IMG/VR virus record: IMGVR_UViG_3300023049_000005 | Location: 124,001-188,000 of that record | Reading direction: 5' to 3' (one strand) | Length of the DNA: 64,000 nt | Shown here: piece after piece, positions 33,357 to 40,024 of the stretch | Numbering within the stretch: position 1 is the first letter of the stretch | How the letters are laid out: each line of letters begins with the position of its first letter | The notes under the pieces: model-generated | What the model was told of the DNA's origin: nothing | Databases searched by the model: none | What the model saw: the letters and a program-made list of their open reading frames with translations, nothing else | Made by a program: the position numbers and the translations under genes

Positions 33357-33770
33357 ATGAAGCATATTAGATCAAGTAAGGTCAAGAAATTATTCAAGAC
33401 TGTAAAAAAGTATATTGAAGTATCTGATAATGCAGATAATCCAATATCTGAATATAGTAACGACAACGAGGATGTTCGAAACACTTTAATTAATCACATT
33501 ACTCAGGCAGAATTAGAAGACAGATATTTAGATAAATATAAAGAGGCAGAAGAAGACCTGTTAATTATCGATGAATTTTTGGATCTTGTTGATTTAGATA
33601 AATTAGAATCAGACAAGGAACAAGAAGTACTTCGAGTATATAATACATTAAGAGAAAAAAAGAATAGTATCCGAAATAAGAAACTACTAGCTAACATTGT
33701 TTTGGACATGAAATATACGTTCAGAGGTATATATCAATACAACAATGATCTAAAATCTTTGAAATTATAG
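33357..33770 (+). CDS. Hypothetical protein
   Basis: 137-aa ORF. Confidence 0.7.
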   Translation: MKHIRSSKVKKLFKTVKKYIEVSDNADNPISEYSNDNEDVRNTLINHITQAELEDRYLDKYKEAEEDLLIIDEFLDLVDLDKLESDKEQEVLRVYNTLREKKNSIRNKKLLANIVLDMKYTFRGIYQYNNDLKSLKL

Positions 33771-33823
33771 TAAACATTTTTCTTTTATAGACTATAAGGA
33801 ATAGAATTTTTTATATATAACCC

Positions 33824-33880
33824 ATGAAAACCTTAAACATAAGTACATTATTAAATAATTTATTATTACTTTTACGGTGA
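33824..33880 (+). CDS. Leu(UUA)-rich attenuator leader peptide MKTLNISTLLNNLLLLLR
   Basis: 18 codons, 8 Leu of which 7 are TTA; immediately followed by an antiterminator/terminator and tRNA-Leu(TAA). Confidence 0.8.
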   Translation: MKTLNISTLLNNLLLLLR

Positions 33881-33881
33881 T

Positions 33882-33946
33882 AAGAATTAGGATATGCACT
33901 TATGTGAAAACTAAACCTAATTCTTTAAAACGATTAGGTTTTTTTT
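33882..33946 (+). promoter_or_regulatory. Transcription attenuator (antiterminator/terminator) of tRNA-Leu(UAA)
   Basis: aagaattagg 33882-33891 is the perfect complement of cctaattctt 33916-33925, which overlaps the terminator 5' arm aaacctaatt 33913-33922 (3' arm gattaggttt 33932-33941, T8 run). Confidence 0.8.
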
Positions 33947-33958
33947 GTGTCTAAAAAT

Positions 33959-34043
33959 GGCTGAGTGGTGGAATTGGTAGACACGTTGGACTTAAAATCC
34001 AATGGGCATTGCGCCCGTGCGGGTTCGACTCCCGCCTCAGCTA
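33959..34043 (+). tRNA. tRNA-Leu (TAA)
   Basis: GGCTGAG/CTCAGCT acceptor, TTGGA-CT TAA AA-TCCAA, long variable arm, GGTTCGA T-loop; no encoded CCA. Confidence 0.95.
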
Positions 34044-34048
34044 CAAAT

Positions 34049-34080
34049 AAAAAAACTAAGACTACCCTTAGTTTTTTTTT
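34049..34080 (+). terminator. Putative terminator after tRNA-Leu
   Basis: aaaaaactaag-actacc-cttagtttttttt (AT-rich, weak stem). Confidence 0.6.
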
Positions 34081-34095
34081 AATAATATTAAAAAA

Positions 34096-34800
34096 ATGAA
34101 ACTAGTTAATAAAAATTACGAATTTGAAGATTTTTTAGCTATCGGTTATGATACAGTAGCTAACTGTAACCACGAGTGTGAGGAGTATGGTATATGTAGA
34201 TGTACTATTAAAAATAATGTTTGTTTTGATAAGTTTAATGATCTAGAATTAAAGGATCACATATTAGATTTATTATGTAAAGATCTTTCTAAAGAAGAGA
34301 AGAGAAATGTTTTTATTGATGATTTACTATGTAATGGAGTTAGTCAGATAAGAGAGTATTTTATCGATAGAGTATTGAAGATAAACAATTGTTATGATCC
34401 TGAAAATTGGGAGATAGAAGTTAGTGGGGGCTATTATGGAGAAGAAATTCATGGTGTTTATTTAAGTATATTAGATAGAGTAAATAGTGATTTAGGACAA
34501 TATACAGGAGATATTAATAAAGATATACCTTTCTTATTGGAGAGAGAGTATGGTGGGCTAAATCATAGGTTAGTAGGAAAAAAATGGAAGGAAGGTATTG
34601 TTAAAATGGATGATATAATTTTTCCACAAACCCAACATTATAATAAAGTAGATGGTAATCTTTATTATTATAAAGATGAATATTACCCATTCCCAAGAGG
34701 TGTGGTTTTGCAAGATGAAAAAAAATATAAAGTGATCGATGGGTATCACAGATTAAAAAATACAAACCAATCCAATGTAATTGTGTATATTTGTTATTAA
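34096..34800 (+). CDS. Protein with C-terminal ParB/Srx-like motif
   Basis: 'YKVIDGYHRL'; N-terminal Cys cluster. Confidence 0.55.
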   Translation: MKLVNKNYEFEDFLAIGYDTVANCNHECEEYGICRCTIKNNVCFDKFNDLELKDHILDLLCKDLSKEEKRNVFIDDLLCNGVSQIREYFIDRVLKINNCYDPENWEIEVSGGYYGEEIHGVYLSILDRVNSDLGQYTGDINKDIPFLLEREYGGLNHRLVGKKWKEGIVKMDDIIFPQTQHYNKVDGNLYYYKDEYYPFPRGVVLQDEKKYKVIDGYHRLKNTNQSNVIVYICY

Positions 34801-34991: not shown

Positions 34992-36275
34992 ATGTATAAA
35001 GGCGAAGATAAATATATTTTGGTAATGTTGCCCTATCCTAGTGGTAGTGGATTACATGTTGGTCATTCCTATTGTTATGCTTTAATGGATAGTTACTGCA
35101 GATGGAAAAGGTATATGGGGGAATCTGTGTTCCAACCATTTGGTTATGATAGTTTTGGGTTGCCTGCTGAATTATATGCTGACAAAGTAGGTAGAGATCC
35201 AAAAGAAGTCACACAAGAAAACATAGAGAACTTTAGGAAACAGATGGATCATATGAATACCATGTTTGAGGAAAAATTGATCACATCCGATCCTTCTTAT
35301 CAAAAATGGAGTCAGTTCATATTCGATGTCATGAAAAAAAGTGGATTGGCTTATAAAAAATTTGGGGAAACTAGTTATTGTCCAAGTTGTAAAACTACAT
35401 TGGCGAATGCTCAAATAATAGATGATTATTGTGAACGTTGTTCCTCTAAAATAGAACAGACTGAATCAGAACAATGGTACTTTAAAATCACTGATTATAT
35501 CGATAGATTGGAAAAGAACTTAGATGAAATTGATTACCCATCTAAGACCATTAAGCAACAAAGACATTGGTTGCAGAATATGAGAGAGAATAATATCGAT
35601 TGGTGTGTTTCTAGACAAAGGAAATGGGGCTGTCCTATTCCGATTGAGGGGGAAGAAGATACCTTGGATACATTTGTTGATAGTAGTTTCTACTTCATTA
35701 GATATTGTGATCCTGATAATACAGAAGAAATTTGTAGTAAAGAAAACTTTAAACAAGTTGATTTATGTATAGGTGGTAACGAACATGCTTGCGCACATTT
35801 GGTATATGCTAGATTCATGATGATGGTATTATATGATAATGGTTATGTACCTGTTGAAGAACCCTTTAAGAAAGTTGTCCATAATGGGATGATTACTAAG
35901 GATGGTTATAAGATGTCTAAATCTAAAGGTAATGTTGTTGATCCAAATGATTATGACCCAAATGAATTGAGAATGTACTTGATGTTTATCGGTCCTTACA
36001 CACAGGGTGGTGATTGGGAAGATAGCAAGATCAAAGGCATCAGAAGGTTTATTGGTAGATGGGATAGATGGATGGAAACTGCCGAAGAAAACGGAGAAGG
36101 ATTAAATGATATTAATGAATTGGAAGAAACTATTGATGATTATATGAATAGTTGGAAATTCAATAAAGTTATTTCCTCATTGATGGAATACTATAATAAG
36201 AACAAGAACAATACTATTAGTACTGATAGTAAAGAGAAGTTGAATAAGATATATAATTGTTTTAAAACAAAGTAA
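34992..36275 (+). CDS. leuS: Minimal leucyl-tRNA synthetase (no CP1 editing domain)
   Basis: MLPYPSGSGLHVGH (HIGH), GYDSFGLPAE, Zn knuckle, QWYFKITDY, DWCVSRQRKWGCPIP, DTLDTFVDSS, GGNEHA..HL.YARF, KMSKS; about 427 aa from ATG 34992. Confidence 0.9.
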   Translation: MYKGEDKYILVMLPYPSGSGLHVGHSYCYALMDSYCRWKRYMGESVFQPFGYDSFGLPAELYADKVGRDPKEVTQENIENFRKQMDHMNTMFEEKLITSDPSYQKWSQFIFDVMKKSGLAYKKFGETSYCPSCKTTLANAQIIDDYCERCSSKIEQTESEQWYFKITDYIDRLEKNLDEIDYPSKTIKQQRHWLQNMRENNIDWCVSRQRKWGCPIPIEGEEDTLDTFVDSSFYFIRYCDPDNTEEICSKENFKQVDLCIGGNEHACAHLVYARFMMMVLYDNGYVPVEEPFKKVVHNGMITKDGYKMSKSKGNVVDPNDYDPNELRMYLMFIGPYTQGGDWEDSKIKGIRRFIGRWDRWMETAEENGEGLNDINELEETIDDYMNSWKFNKVISSLMEYYNKNKNNTISTDSKEKLNKIYNCFKTK

Positions 36276-36276
36276 T

Positions 36277-37206
36277 ATGAAAGAATATATTTTCGAAAAA
36301 GGGAAAAGGGTATATAAGTTAACCGATGAGGGTATCTTATATAATAAACTTAAAGTTAATCCGATAAAGAGAATAAATCGCTTCAAGAAAGTAAAGATAC
36401 CGAAGGTGAATCCTCATCAAATTGTTATCGGTGGTGGATCTTATAACAGGAAAGTGTTTTATTATGAATTATACCACGACACCAAATTAAAAGAAGGTGA
36501 AACAGTTAGATTCAAAAACAAAATAGGAGATTACTCTAAGTCTAACCTTTTACTTAAAATGATATCAGAAAATGATCCTCCTTATTTTAGAAATATAGAT
36601 AAAAAAATATACCACTATAACTACAAGAATATTTTAATAGGAATATATGACAGTCAATATAAAGCTAGTCTTGGAACAGGTATAAACCAATCTTGTATTT
36701 CACAACGTCTACGAGGTAAAATAAATACATCTAGGTTTGTGGATTATTCATATATGGTATATGATGGCGACGAATTATTAGACAGATATAGTGATTATAA
36801 CCAATCGGGCATAAACACTGTTGTCCAAATGGACTTAGATGGTAACGTGTTGAATAAATTTGGCAATGCAAAGGATGCCGCAGACATTTTCGAGTTAGGA
36901 ACGTGTGCAGAATCACATATTGTGAAATGTTGTAGGAAAAAGAGAGAAAAGGCTTATGGGTATAGGTGGTCATATTCTTGCGATTACAGAAAGAGAATGA
37001 AGAAAATGGTAGTTAAGTATAACAAAGATGGAGATCCTATTGCTATTTATAAGAATAGACAAGATGCTGTCAAGAATATGCCTATACTCAAATCATATTT
37101 ATCTTTAGTAATAAACGGTAAAATCAACCCTAAAAAATTTAGCATCAAAGAAGTTAGTTATGATGCGGGATTAAGTATAAGAAACAAATTGGTTGAGGAA
37201 GTTTAA
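36277..37206 (+). CDS. NUMOD1/IENR1-repeat protein, degenerate HNH homing-endonuclease-like
   Basis: Three 'V.QY..DG..I..F.S..DA' type repeats; HNH-like region lacks the His/Asn residues. Confidence 0.6.
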   Translation: MKEYIFEKGKRVYKLTDEGILYNKLKVNPIKRINRFKKVKIPKVNPHQIVIGGGSYNRKVFYYELYHDTKLKEGETVRFKNKIGDYSKSNLLLKMISENDPPYFRNIDKKIYHYNYKNILIGIYDSQYKASLGTGINQSCISQRLRGKINTSRFVDYSYMVYDGDELLDRYSDYNQSGINTVVQMDLDGNVLNKFGNAKDAADIFELGTCAESHIVKCCRKKREKAYGYRWSYSCDYRKRMKKMVVKYNKDGDPIAIYKNRQDAVKNMPILKSYLSLVINGKINPKKFSIKEVSYDAGLSIRNKLVEEV

Positions 37207-37939: not shown

Positions 37940-37963
37940 ATTAAATAAACTTTATTATATTTG
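37934..37963 (+). promoter_or_regulatory. Bacteroidota sigma70-type promoter for the tRNA cluster leader
   Basis: TTG (37934-36), 19-nt spacer, TATATTTG (37956-63). Confidence 0.65.
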
Positions 37964-38010
37964 CAAACTATAAGACAAAAAGGAACATAAAAACTTTTAT
38001 ATATACTGAA

Positions 38011-38112
38011 ATGAAAAACTTAAATTTAAATATTAATCTGAATAATCTTAACACGTGTGTCATGAACATTACCGTGAATAGGAATGTTGGGTCAAAATTT
38101 AAAGTAAAGTAA
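38011..38112 (+). CDS. Multivalent attenuator leader peptide MKNLNLNINLNNLNTCVMNITVNRNVGSKFKVK
   Basis: 33 codons, 10 Asn; residues 3-23 are exclusively N/L/I/T/C/V/M. Confidence 0.8.
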   Translation: MKNLNLNINLNNLNTCVMNITVNRNVGSKFKVK

Positions 38113-38168
38113 AGTAATTTTACACTAAGAAATTTTTAAAACCCAACTTCAAAAGAGTTGGGTTTTTT
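38086..38168 (+). promoter_or_regulatory. Transcription attenuator of the tRNA cluster
   Basis: gttgggt 38086-92 (+aaaattt 38094-100) pairs with acccaac 38141-47 (+aaatttt 38130-36), competing with terminator aaaacccaactt 38138-49 / gagttgggtttt 38155-66 plus T-run. Confidence 0.8.
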
Positions 38169-38180
38169 GTTTTTATATAT

Positions 38181-38252
38181 GGACTGTTAGCTCAGAGACA
38201 GAGCAGATGGCTGTTAACCATCAGGTCGGGATCTCGGAATTCCCACAGTCCT
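38181..38252 (+). tRNA. tRNA-Asn (GTT), atypical T-arm
   Basis: GGACTGT/ACAGTCC acceptor; GATGG-CT GTT AA-CCATC; T-loop CTCGGAA; U discriminator. Confidence 0.75.
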
Positions 38253-38433: not shown

Positions 38434-38520
38434 TCTTGGGTTGCCGTAGTGGTCGAACGGTCCTGACTGTTAATCAGGTGAGTTAATACTCCATCGTAGG
38501 TTCAAATCCTACCCCAAGAG
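38434..38520 (+). tRNA. tRNA-Asn (GTT) with long variable arm
   Basis: TCTTGGG/CCCAAGA, CCTGA-CT GTT AA-TCAGG, 17-nt variable region. Confidence 0.85.
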
Positions 38521-38523
38521 CAT

Positions 38524-38607: not shown

Positions 38608-38612
38608 CATAT

Positions 38613-38693
38613 TGGTAGGTACTCAGCCCATCCTGATAAGATGGAGAACTGTAATTGGTGTTGAAAATGTGGGTTCAAATCCCACTCTACCAA
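38613..38693 (+). tRNA. D-arm-less tRNA-Ile (GAT)-like RNA
   Basis: TGGTAGG/TCTACCA acceptor, 8-nt D-replacement loop, CCATC-CT GAT AA-GATGG, 24-nt variable region, GTGGG-TTCAAAT-CCCAC. Confidence 0.65.
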
Positions 38694-38783: not shown

Positions 38784-38868
38784 GCTAATGTCGCATAGTT
38801 GGTCGATTGCACTCCCCTTGTAAGGGAGAACTGAAAAGACATCGGGGGTTCGAATCCCTCCATTAGCT
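38784..38868 (+). tRNA. tRNA-Thr (TGT) with extended variable region
   Basis: GCTAATG/CATTAGC, CTCCC-CT TGT AA-GGGAG. Confidence 0.85.
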
Positions 38869-38876
38869 CAAAATAT

Positions 38877-39139: not shown

Positions 39140-39223
39140 ATCCCTATGGTGTAATTGGTGACATCCTTGTTTTACATGCAAGAGACGTGAAGTATAATCT
39201 TGGTTCGAGTCCAAGTAGGGATA
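39140..39223 (+). tRNA. tRNA-Val (TAC) with extended variable region
   Basis: ATCCCTA/TAGGGAT, CTTGT-TT TAC AT-GCAAG, 16-nt variable region. Confidence 0.82.
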
Positions 39224-39230
39224 CAAATAA

Positions 39231-39370
39231 GTGTGTGGTCTATATACCTTAATATGATCTAGATAGTATTAAGAAGAATTGGTTAGACAAAAACTGTGAA
39301 AAGTTATGTATATAGTCTAGGATAGATATATGAATTTAACAGGGCGTGAGTTCGATTCTCACCACATGCT
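39231..39370 (+). ncRNA. tRNA-like RNA (acceptor stem + T-arm, large non-tRNA core)
   Basis: GTGTGTG/CACATGC acceptor with G3:U70, GTGAG-TTCGATT-CTCAC T-arm, internal stems ctatatac/gtatatag and cttaatat/gtattaag. Confidence 0.55.
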
Positions 39371-39377
39371 CAAATAT

Positions 39378-39464: not shown

Positions 39465-39550
39465 GTCGGTGTGACCTGAGTGGCGAAGGGTGTGGACTGC
39501 AAATCCATAGAACGAAAGTTCCATCGTAGGTTCGAGTCCTACCACCGACT
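39465..39550 (+). tRNA. tRNA-Cys (GCA) with long variable arm
   Basis: GTCGGTG/CACCGAC, GTGGA-CT GCA AA-TCCAT, gaac-gaaa-gttc variable stem, U73. Confidence 0.88.
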
Positions 39551-39620
39551 CTAAGTAGTATTATAGTACATTAAGTTATTTTTACTATATTTGTAAAAAT
39601 AAACCAACAAAACTTTCATT

Positions 39621-39893
39621 ATGTTATTTAATCCAAGTCTATTATATCCAACTATATTGTTGAGCCTAGTTTTTTTATCAATAGTTAAAATATTAGATAA
39701 AAAAGCCAATAAAGAAACTTTAACGGTCATATTATCTATGGTTAGTGGTTCTGTGTTTATGATGATTCTTACTATAAGTGTAGCTAGGTTCATTTTATTA
39801 AATGATATGTGGATAGTCCTAGTATATGGTATCGGAACAGGTATCAGTAAATATTTATATATCTATTTATGTAAAAAGTATAATATTAAATAA
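39621..39893 (+). CDS. Small membrane protein
   Basis: 90 aa, three hydrophobic segments. Confidence 0.65.
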   Translation: MLFNPSLLYPTILLSLVFLSIVKILDKKANKETLTVILSMVSGSVFMMILTISVARFILLNDMWIVLVYGIGTGISKYLYIYLCKKYNIK

Positions 39894-39929
39894 GTTTTAG
39901 TATATTTGTATTGATAAACAAATTAAAAC

Positions 39930-40003
39930 GGGCCCTTAGCTCAGTTGGTTAGAGCAACTGACTCATAATCAGTAGGTCGATGGTTCGAGTCCATCAGGGC
40001 CCA
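39930..40003 (+). tRNA. tRNA (CAT), likely Ile2 (lysidine) type
   Basis: GGGCCCT/AGGGCCC, ACTGA-CT CAT AA-TCAGT; own TATATTTG box at 39901. Confidence 0.9.
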
Positions 40004-40024
40004 CTTAACTAAAAACAAACAACT

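What the first reader, a model, noticed from the sequence alone, without database searches (positions are those of the whole stretch)
33772..34043. UUA-sensing leader-peptide attenuator controlling tRNA-Leu(UAA)
Seen: leader ORF 33824-33880 (MKTLNISTLLNNLLLLLR) has 7 TTA codons, including TTA TTA TTA CTT TTA just before the stop. Immediately after the stop, aagaattagg (33882-91) is perfectly complementary to cctaattctt (33916-25), overlapping the 5' arm of the terminator (33913-33946). The next gene is tRNA-Leu with anticodon UAA, the decoder of UUA. Inference: a ribosome reaching the stop masks the antiterminator and transcription terminates; stalling on UUA permits read-through, so the tRNA is made only when its own codon is hungry. 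This second, independent copy of the design greatly strengthens the case for the array attenuator. The mini-LeuRS lies about 950 nt downstream, but a weak terminator (34049-34080) may uncouple it.
Basis: partly seen in the sequence, partly recalled or inferred. Interest (0 to 1): 0.9.

Follow-up and report, generated by a model that had tools for sequence, protein, structure and literature searches.

The report
Codon-hunger attenuator controlling a phage tRNA
A giant lake-water phage puts its leucine tRNA behind a tiny test gene full of that tRNA's own codon, so the tRNA is probably made only when ribosomes stall on that codon. This classic bacterial switch has not, as far as I could find, been described in front of tRNA genes.

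Summary

- **The leader.** An 18-codon ORF (33824-33880) carries 7 TTA codons. It is the densest TTA cluster among 2,780 small ORFs of this 271-kb phage genome.
- **The switch.** A 10-bp antiterminator (33882-91:33916-25) competes with a terminator hairpin (33913-22:33932-41, then a T-run). The terminator ends 12 nt before the genome's only tRNA-Leu(UAA).
- **A third pairing.** 33856-70:33876-89 completes a trp-like four-segment layout. Folds with ribosome-masked segments switch as the model requires.
- **More copies.** The same genome holds three more copies (His; Lys/Phe; Asn/Leu/Ile/Thr/Val/Cys/Met). Four related huge phages hold about 20 more.
- **Codon match.** Each leader is enriched in the codons read by the tRNAs behind it: 0.27 against 0.107 after permutation (0 of 20,000), in the ORF frame only.
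- **Co-variation.** Leader-terminator complementarity co-varies (0 of 20,000).
- **Codon-level specificity.** Leaders before Leu(UAG/GAG/CAA) tRNAs use CTA, CTT and TTG and no TTA.

No Rfam family and no paper I could find describes this in front of tRNA genes. Nothing is shown experimentally, and no RNA data were available.

The parts
33791..33819 (+). Upstream signals: ACTATAAG (33791-98) and TATATATA (33812-19, 12 nt before the ATG). There is no Shine-Dalgarno sequence.
   Evidence: Read. The same two motifs precede the array leader. TATATA lies at -16..-5 in 60 of 275 long ORFs of the genome, so it is a general gene-start signal. The Bacteroidota-type -7 box TAnnTTTG seen before most sibling leaders is degenerate here.
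33824..33880 (+). Leader ORF of 18 codons, with TTA at codons 4, 9, 10, 13, 14, 15 and 17, then CGG and TGA.
   Evidence: It is the top-ranked TTA density of 2,780 small ORFs.
33856..33889 (+). Segment 1:2 hairpin (33856-70 pairs with 33876-89). It ties up the antiterminator strand when the leader is not being translated, and may also be a pause hairpin.
   Evidence: MFE folds. The strain variant 33876 G>A turns a G.U pair into A-U.
33882..33925 (+). Antiterminator: 33882-91 pairs with 33916-25 (10 perfect pairs, -8.7 kcal/mol).
   Evidence: It is the MFE structure when the RNA is free only from 33876 or 33881.
33913..33946 (+). Intrinsic terminator: stem 33913-22:33932-41, 9-nt loop, T-run 33939-46.
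   Evidence: It forms when the RNA is free only from 33894 (ribosome at the stop codon) or when segment 1:2 is formed.
33959..34044 (+). tRNA-Leu, anticodon UAA. It is the only one in the genome.
   Evidence: ARAGORN. Rfam 61.3 bits.
34049..34078 (+). A/U-rich hairpin with a T-run that closes the tRNA unit.
   Evidence: -10.1 kcal/mol.
37956..38180 (+). Sibling attenuator of the tRNA array. It comprises the TATATTTG box (37956-63), a 33-codon leader (38011-38112), the antiterminator GTTGGGT (38086-92) against ACCCAAC (38141-47), and the terminator (38138-66) with its T-run. The first tRNA follows at 38181.
   Evidence: 24 of 32 leader residues are amino acids of the array's tRNAs.

Best explanation
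This is a ribosome-mediated (leader-peptide) transcription attenuator whose regulated product is a tRNA.

1. Transcription starts upstream of 33824 and the 18-codon leader is translated.
2. If UUA is decoded quickly, the ribosome runs to the UGA at 33878. There its footprint covers 33882-91, so the terminator 33913-41 plus the U-run forms and transcription stops about 12 nt before the tRNA.
3. If Leu-tRNA(UAA) is scarce, the ribosome stalls on the UUA run (codons 9-15). That opens the 1:2 hairpin and leaves 33882-91 free to pair with 33916-25. The terminator cannot form, and RNA polymerase reads into tRNA-Leu(UAA).
4. Without any translation, 1:2 plus the terminator form and transcription stops.

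The result is a negative feedback that matches supply of the tRNA for the phage's commonest leucine codon to demand.

Shown from sequence: all the elements, their geometry, the predicted switching, and the family-wide co-variation. Inferred: translation of the leader, coupling to transcription, termination efficiency, and the physiological signal. That signal could be codon-usage mismatch with the host, loss of host tRNA, or leucine starvation.
For: - Elements and coordinates.
- TTA accounts for 58% of Leu codons and 4.8% of all codons in the phage.
- The leader is the unique top TTA cluster of 2,780 small ORFs and sits before the only tRNA-Leu(UAA).
- The expected chance of such placement within 150 nt on the right strand is about 3e-4 (my arithmetic).
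- Structure switching with masked segments.
- Distances from TTA codons 13-15 to the antiterminator are 22, 19 and 16 nt, and the stop codon is 2 nt before it.
- The 10-bp complement has P=0.0085 and ranks 1 of 189.
- Only 12 nt separate the T-run from the tRNA, so there is no room for a promoter.
- Three further copies lie in the same genome, and about 20 lie in relatives L001, L004/L022/L023, L006/L024, L014, L015 and L026.
- With an unbiased leader rule, 24 of 26 tRNA-proximal terminators have a leader ORF, against 205 of 422 other terminators.
- Codon-to-anticodon match is 0.27 against 0.107+-0.02 after permutation (0 of 20,000). Control ORFs score 0.112.
- The match is specific to the ORF frame: 0.27 against 0.106 and 0.093, p about 1e-5.
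- Leu(tag/gag/caa) leaders use CTA, CTT and TTG twice each and no TTA. Arg(acg) leaders use CGC and CGA.
- Own leader-terminator pairing is -10.6 kcal/mol against -6.05 for crossed pairs (0 of 20,000). The z-score is -2.4 against -0.46 for control terminators.
- Three-way compensatory change between L023 and L024.
- The leader shares the TATATA gene-start signal.
Against: - The terminator is weak: 2 G-C pairs, about -7 kcal/mol. The consensus scan does not call it.
- No convincing promoter. The -7 box found before sibling leaders is degenerate here, so the unit may be fed by read-through from the gene ending at 33770.
- TTA is the default Leu codon here, so codon choice in this leader alone is uninformative. 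The argument rests on density, position and the siblings.
- A stall at TTA codon 17 would itself cover the antiterminator.
- No orthologue of this very leader was found. The only natural variation is one substitution.
- No RNA run was listed.
- The host, and whether it couples translation to transcription, are unknown.
- Not every tRNA in these phages has the design: tRNA-Met at 39930 has its own promoter, and many arrays of the 353-kb relative lack leaders.
Confidence: 0.78

Rival explanations
1. The hairpin is an ordinary, leaky terminator ending the upstream unit. The small ORF and the complementarity are chance products of AT-rich DNA, and the tRNA is made by constitutive read-through.
For: The genome is 30% G+C and TTA is the commonest Leu codon. 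The terminator is weak and unscored by the scan. There is no clear promoter of its own.
Against: The ORF has the unique top TTA density of 2,780. The 10-bp complement ranks 1 of 189. The same three-part design recurs before other tRNA sets with matching codons and co-varying helices. Twenty other phage contigs with the same tRNA-Leu core lack it.
Confidence: 0.06
2. The leader is translated and senses decoding, but the read-out is not the intrinsic terminator switch. Alternatives include factor-dependent termination, ribosome-dependent processing or stability of the pre-tRNA, or mainly leucine starvation rather than tRNA supply.
For: Lys leaders in relatives are followed by a hairpin without a U-run, so some family members cannot use a canonical intrinsic terminator. 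The terminator here is weak.
Against: Most members, including this one, have a hairpin plus U-run abutting the tRNA, and an antiterminator that overlaps its 5' arm. Predicted switching fits the classical model.
Confidence: 0.1
3. The leader RNA binds tRNA directly (T-box-like or a tRNA sponge) without being translated.
For: Runs of codons complementary to the anticodon of the gene downstream.
Against: No T-box or other riboswitch match, even at E up to 10. The cognate triplets are enriched only in the frame set by an ATG and a stop. The leaders carry the phage's gene-start signal.
Confidence: 0.02
4. The ORF encodes a functional small hydrophobic peptide unrelated to tRNA control.
For: The Leu-rich C-terminus could be membrane-active.
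Against: Sibling leaders share position and layout but not composition: poly-Gln, His/Phe/Lys, Ser/Arg, Pro/Asp. What is conserved is the match to the tRNAs, not a peptide.
Confidence: 0.02

Closest known systems
Leucine operon leader of enterobacteria (leuL; Rfam RF00512) and the trp, his, phe and thr leaders
   Same: A short translated ORF with a run of cognate codons; mutually exclusive anti-antiterminator, antiterminator and terminator hairpins; read-through when the ribosome stalls. These features are from established knowledge of these systems. The Lys/Phe sibling even gives a sub-threshold full-length match to His_leader RF00514 (34 bits, E=0.0024).
   Different: The regulated gene is a tRNA, not biosynthetic enzymes. 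The antiterminator strand lies just after the stop codon. The signal would include the tRNA's own abundance, which closes a direct feedback loop. The element is in a phage. There is no sequence membership: no Rfam leader family matches this element.
pheST leader (pheM) attenuator of E. coli
   Same: Leader-peptide attenuation applied to a component of the translation apparatus rather than to biosynthesis (from my own knowledge).
   Different: It controls a synthetase mRNA. Here the product is the tRNA itself, and the family covers nearly all amino acids.
ilv and thr multi-amino-acid leaders
   Same: One leader mixes codons for several amino acids. The array leader at 38011-38112 does the same with Asn, Leu, Ile, Thr, Val, Cys and Met.
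   Different: Here the mix mirrors the anticodons of a tRNA array.
T-box riboswitches
   Same: Transcription attenuation that reports the state of a specific tRNA and controls translation-related genes.
   Different: T-boxes bind uncharged tRNA directly and need no ribosome. There is no T-box match here, and the signal is frame-specific.
bldA tRNA-Leu(UAA) and TTA-codon control in Streptomyces
   Same: The UUA codon and its single tRNA act as a regulatory pair (PMC10732093 title and abstract; otherwise my own knowledge).
   Different: The logic is reversed. There the tRNA level controls TTA-containing genes; here TTA codons would control the tRNA level.
Poly-Cys leaderless short-ORF attenuators in mycobacteria (bioRxiv 10.1101/834739, abstract seen)
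   Same: A short ORF with a codon run, little or no 5' UTR and no Shine-Dalgarno sequence, acting as an amino-acid-responsive attenuator.
   Different: It controls protein-coding operons in a different phylum. The mechanism there is not an intrinsic terminator abutting a tRNA.

Membership tests
Ribosome-mediated (leader-peptide) transcription attenuators | Short ORF with a start codon and a credible initiation signal upstream of the regulated gene | tested here: met
   ATG at 33824, 18 codons. TATATA lies 12 nt upstream, as in 60 of 275 genes of the phage, which uses no Shine-Dalgarno sequence.
Ribosome-mediated (leader-peptide) transcription attenuators | Cluster of regulatory codons cognate to what is regulated | tested here: met
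   7 of 17 codons are TTA, rank 1 of 2,780. The downstream gene is tRNA-Leu(UAA).
Ribosome-mediated (leader-peptide) transcription attenuators | Intrinsic terminator between the leader and the regulated gene | tested here: met
   10-bp hairpin plus T8 ending 12 nt before the tRNA. It is weak, with 2 G-C pairs, and is missed by the consensus scan.
Ribosome-mediated (leader-peptide) transcription attenuators | Antiterminator mutually exclusive with the terminator, placed so that a ribosome at the stop codon masks it and a ribosome at the regulatory codons does not | tested here: met
   33882-91:33916-25 overlaps the 5' arm. Predicted switching is and distances. The ribosome footprint size comes from established knowledge, not from measurement here.
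Ribosome-mediated (leader-peptide) transcription attenuators | Read-through rises when the cognate charged tRNA is limiting | not testable with these tools
   No RNA run was listed. The phage is uncultured.
Ribosome-mediated (leader-peptide) transcription attenuators | Regulated genes encode amino-acid biosynthesis enzymes or synthetases (typical of known members, not part of the mechanism) | tested here: not met
   The regulated gene is a tRNA, closed by its own hairpin at 34049-78.
Rfam Leu_leader RF00512 and other Rfam leader families | Score at or above the family's gathering threshold | tested here: not met
   No leader family matches 33700-34100, even at E up to 10. A sibling reaches 34 bits against His_leader, whose threshold is 49.
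T-box riboswitch | Specifier loop and T-box sequence recognised by the Rfam model | tested here: not met
   No match.

The most novel reading that the evidence does not exclude
A clade of huge phages that probably infect Bacteroidota has turned the leader-peptide attenuator into a modular, re-programmable codon-hunger sensor. It places most of the phages' tRNA genes, covering nearly all amino acids, under feedback from the very codons each tRNA or tRNA array decodes. These would be the first attenuators known to control tRNA genes. They would let the phage top up exactly those tRNAs that the infected cell lacks, for instance after host tRNA decay or cleavage by anticodon nucleases.
Probability: 0.7. 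Interest if true: 0.92.

Novelty: new variant of a known kind. Interest (0 to 1): 0.88.

Why it matters
How phages regulate their tRNA genes is essentially unknown. Current work treats phage tRNAs as a fixed supplement for codon bias or as spares against host tRNA-cleaving defences.

A sensor that measures decoding of a given codon and answers by making the matching tRNA would be a new control loop in translation. It would also be a new target class for a textbook mechanism.

Because the leaders are short, modular and exist for almost every amino acid and several individual codons, they offer two practical uses:
- Ready-made natural reporters of codon-specific ribosome stalling.
- A way to read which codons odd phage tRNAs are meant to serve.

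The design also gives a simple rule for annotation: leader, then terminator, then tRNA, with leader codons matching the downstream anticodons.

Tried and rejected
- **Orthologues of this exact leader.** Single-protein scans with the neighbouring ORF and the mini-LeuRS found none in viral contigs. The metagenome scan returned only the source contig. Compensatory change in this very helix therefore could not be tested. Strain variants in three lake runs gave one substitution.
- **RNA evidence.** No RNA run was listed.
- **tRNA-core scan.** An exact 36-nt tRNA-Leu core gave 20 viral contigs, none with the design. They are useful only as a negative control.
- **Motif scan.** AATATATAAGAA..ATGA gave 109+ unspecific hits and no new leaders.
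- **Nearest-ORF rule.** The rule 'ORF with the nearest stop' picked spurious 6-10-codon ORFs in the spacers. I replaced it with 'longest ORF of at least 10 codons ending within 110 nt'.
- My first hand-set terminator register was off by one and gave a positive energy. The MFE register is the one reported.
- **Known RNA families.** Rfam matches to PyrR, snoRNA and miRNA models at E of 0.4-2.5 are chance level.
- **Literature.** Eight full-text searches and three papers read found no description of leader-peptide attenuators before tRNA genes. The huge-phage paper PMC7162821 contains neither 'attenuat' nor 'leader'. My recollection that the E. coli tRNA-Phe genes might have such leaders could not be confirmed.

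Full report
**Context.** The window is bases 124001-188000 of a single 270,756-bp contig. The contig is 29.8% G+C and reads well in the standard code. It comes from a lake-water metagenome: the source contig is Ga0136601_1000001, and only lake-water DNA runs hold it. Its closest public relative by DNA is LR745206.1, an uncultured 634,780-bp phage, with 70% identity over the synthetase gene only. The paper describing such genomes says that the five genomes of more than 634 kb fall in the 'Mahaphage' clade and are predicted to replicate in Bacteroidetes (PMC7162821). Two features of this genome fit such a host. Its genes have no purine-rich ribosome-binding site, and a TAnnTTTG box (the Bacteroidota -7 promoter consensus, from my own knowledge) recurs upstream of genes and leaders.

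**The observation.** Reading the sequence confirms each element. The ORF 33824-33880 has 18 codons, and TTA sits at codons 4, 9, 10, 13, 14, 15 and 17. A CGG codon separates the last TTA from the TGA. Positions 33882-91 are the perfect reverse complement of 33916-25. The terminator stem is 33913-22:33932-41, followed by the T-run 33939-46. tRNA-Leu(UAA) runs from 33959 to 34044, and an A/U-rich hairpin at 34049-78 closes the unit.

**Is it more than chance?** TTA makes up 58% of leucine codons and 4.8% of all codons in this phage, so TTA as such is not remarkable. The density is. Of 2,780 ATG ORFs of 8-45 codons in all six frames of the whole genome, this is the only one with six TTA in ten codons. 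It also lies immediately upstream of the only tRNA-Leu(UAA) among the genome's tRNAs. A perfect complement of 10 bp or more between the leader region and the terminator's 5' arm and loop arises in 0.85% of shuffles. It is the longest found upstream of any of the 189 terminator-like hairpins in the genome.

**Anatomy and predicted behaviour.** The minimum-energy fold of the whole leader adds a third pairing: 33856-70 (the TTA run) with 33876-89. This gives the four-segment layout of the trp-type attenuators.
- With the RNA free only from 33876 or 33881, as behind a ribosome stalled on TTA codons 13-15, the antiterminator is the minimum-energy structure and the terminator is absent.
- With the RNA free only from 33894, as behind a ribosome at the stop codon, the terminator forms.
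- With no ribosome, 1:2 plus the terminator form.

TTA codons 13-15 begin 22, 19 and 16 nt before the antiterminator strand, and the stop codon ends 2 nt before it. A ribosome protects roughly 12-15 nt downstream of the A-site codon (established knowledge). The geometry therefore fits: a stall leaves the strand free, and termination of translation covers it. Only 12 nt separate the T-run from the tRNA, so the tRNA must be made by read-through.

**The same design elsewhere in this genome.** Three further copies exist.
- Before the big array: a 33-codon leader at 38011-38112, the antiterminator GTTGGGT against ACCCAAC, the strong terminator 38138-66, then a tRNA at 38181 (Rfam) and the array Asn, Leu, Asn, Leu, Ile, Thr, Val, Thr, Val, Met, Cys. 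24 of 32 leader residues are those amino acids.
- Outside the window, at genome 73136-73213: a leader rich in Lys and Phe, with an antiterminator inside the ORF and a terminator ending 3 nt before the array Lys, Lys, Phe, Lys, Phe, Lys.
- At genome 72600-72656: a leader rich in His, Phe and Lys, with its antiterminator and terminator, followed by two tRNA-His-like genes that ARAGORN misses but Rfam scores at 44.9 and 51.6 bits. The fold z-score is -7.5.

One solitary tRNA-Met (39930) instead has a TATATTTG box 22 nt upstream and no leader. The design is therefore used for most, not all, tRNAs.

**Relatives.** An alignment of the mini-LeuRS with its LR745206.1 homologue retrieved 15 viral loci. 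I then fetched the tRNA regions of four of those phages and of LR745206.1. Leaders followed by terminators abutting tRNAs recur throughout, and their content follows the tRNAs:
- a Pro/Gln/Asp stretch before Pro and Asp tRNAs;
- a poly-Gln leader before three tRNA-Gln;
- a His/Lys/Phe/Trp leader before His, Trp, Phe and Lys tRNAs, in four phages;
- Ser/Arg leaders before Ser and Arg tRNAs;
- a Phe/Glu/Ala/Asp leader before Phe, Glu, Asp and Ala tRNAs;
- an Ile/Gly leader before Ile(UAU) and Gly tRNAs.

The match holds at codon level. Two homologous leaders before tRNA-Leu(UAG), (GAG) and (CAA) contain CTA, CTT and TTG twice each and no TTA. A leader before Arg(ACG) uses CGC and CGA rather than the usual AGA. 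Leaders before Leu(UAA) use TTA.

**Statistics with an unbiased rule.** The leader was defined as the longest ATG ORF of at least 10 codons ending within 110 nt before a terminator that lies within 40 nt of a tRNA.
- 24 of 26 such terminators have a leader, against 205 of 422 other terminators.
- The mean fraction of leader codons decodable by the downstream tRNAs is 0.27. It is 0.107+-0.02 when tRNA sets are permuted (0 of 20,000 reach 0.27) and 0.112+-0.016 for ORFs before other terminators.
- The enrichment exists only in the ORF frame: 0.27 against 0.106 and 0.093, with the ORF frame best in 20 of 24 and p about 1e-5. This argues for reading by ribosomes rather than by base pairing with tRNA.
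- Each leader region pairs better with its own terminator's 5' arm than with others': -10.6 against -6.05 kcal/mol (0 of 20,000 permutations). The z-score against shuffles is -2.4, compared with -0.46 for control terminators.
- Between two homologous Leu leaders, an A-to-G change in the antiterminator is matched by changes in both terminator arms.

In most members the antiterminator strand lies inside the ORF, 15-40 nt before the stop. The element under review is a short variant with the strand just after the stop. Twenty unrelated viral contigs that carry the same tRNA-Leu core have nothing of the kind upstream.

**Translation signals.** Most leaders, including this one, have TATATA about 12 nt before the ATG. 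The same holds for 60 of 275 long ORFs of the genome. The leaders therefore start like real genes. Most siblings also have a TAnnTTTG box 40-95 nt upstream. In this element that box is degenerate, so its promoter is uncertain and transcription may come from the upstream gene.

**Comparison with what is known.** The element works like the leu, his, trp and phe leaders, but it belongs to no described family. No Rfam leader family or T-box matches it, even at E up to 10. One sibling gives a sub-threshold, full-length match to the His leader model. Eight literature searches and three papers read gave no report of leader-peptide attenuation of tRNA genes, in phages or in cells. That library lacks most subscription journals, so an older report cannot be excluded.

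**The neighbouring synthetase.** ORF 34992-36275 is a class I synthetase core closest to bacterial LeuRS. It scores 363 bits against a cut-off of 548 and is about half the usual length. It follows two small ORFs and lies beyond the hairpin at 34049-78. Co-regulation with the tRNA is possible but unsupported.

**Limits.** All of this is sequence inference.
- The terminator is weak.
- The host is unknown.
- No transcript data exist.
- Strain variants differ from the window in the leader by one base only: 33876 G>A, which keeps the 1:2 helix.
- Some Lys leaders in relatives are followed by hairpins without a U-run, and many arrays in the 353-kb relative have no leader. The mechanism may therefore vary within the family.

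**Verdict.** It extends to a family of codon-matched attenuators in front of phage tRNA genes. The mechanism is a new variant of a known kind, and I rate it of high interest.

Noticed in passing
window 38434-38521, 38784-38869, 39140-39224, 39465-39551; genome 73357-73445: The tRNA arrays pair a normal ~75-nt tRNA with an 85-89-nt tRNA that has the same anticodon (Asn, Thr, Val, Cys, Lys) but a long, class-II-like variable arm. Which synthetase charges these tRNAs, and why they are kept, is unexplained.
   Followed up: partly
window 38181-38252; 38612-38693; about 39226-39375; genome 72732-72803 and 72815-72906: tRNAs or tRNA-like stretches that ARAGORN misses. 38181-38252 and the two genome-72.7k tRNA-His-like genes are scored by Rfam and have an unusual T-arm or an insert. 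The gaps in the array hold T-arm-like pieces that may be degenerate or insert-bearing tRNAs.
   Followed up: partly
window 39900-40004: tRNA-Met(CAU) has a TATATTTG box 22 nt upstream and no leader or terminator. The 90-aa ORF at 39621 has the same box at 39589-96. So the box probably is the promoter, and not all tRNAs are attenuated.
   Followed up: partly
whole genome; e.g. window 33812-19, 37998-38005: TATATA sits 5-16 nt before the ATG of 22% of long ORFs, and G is depleted upstream of starts. This is either a promoter giving near-leaderless mRNAs or a Shine-Dalgarno-independent initiation signal.
   Followed up: partly
window 34992-36275: A half-size LeuRS-like class I synthetase (427 aa). 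It matches only parts of the 843-position bacterial LeuRS profile, so I infer that the editing and C-terminal parts are missing. It is conserved at 56-62% identity next to tRNA arrays in 15 viral contigs.
   Followed up: partly
window 33875-33877: The last sense codon of the leader is CGG, the rarest Arg codon class in the genome at 1%. Strain variants in two lake runs have CAG there (33876 G>A). The change keeps the 1:2 helix.
   Followed up: partly
L004 11757-11792, L014 10405-10440, L025 (- strand) before tRNA-Lys, L020 before 5885: Short Lys/Gln-rich leaders before tRNA-Lys genes are followed by a hairpin without a U-run. This subgroup may use another read-out.
   Followed up: no
L015 8342-8414: The 353-kb relative carries a tRNA with anticodon UUA (reads the TAA stop codon) inside its Phe/Glu/Asp array. 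This hints at stop-codon suppression or recoding in that phage.
   Followed up: no
genome 105540-105913, minus strand (outside the window): ARAGORN calls a tmRNA with an atypical tag ending in LAV. I did not check it with Rfam. It could be relevant to ribosomes stalled on leaders.
   Followed up: no
genome 72917-73140 (outside the window): A Cys-rich, zinc-ribbon-like 73-aa ORF sits between the tRNA-His pair and the Lys/Phe leader. Its stop overlaps the leader's ATG (ATGA), so that leader may be translationally coupled.
   Followed up: no
window 36277-37206: The ORF next to the synthetase has a weak NUMOD1 (homing-endonuclease DNA-binding) match.
   Followed up: no
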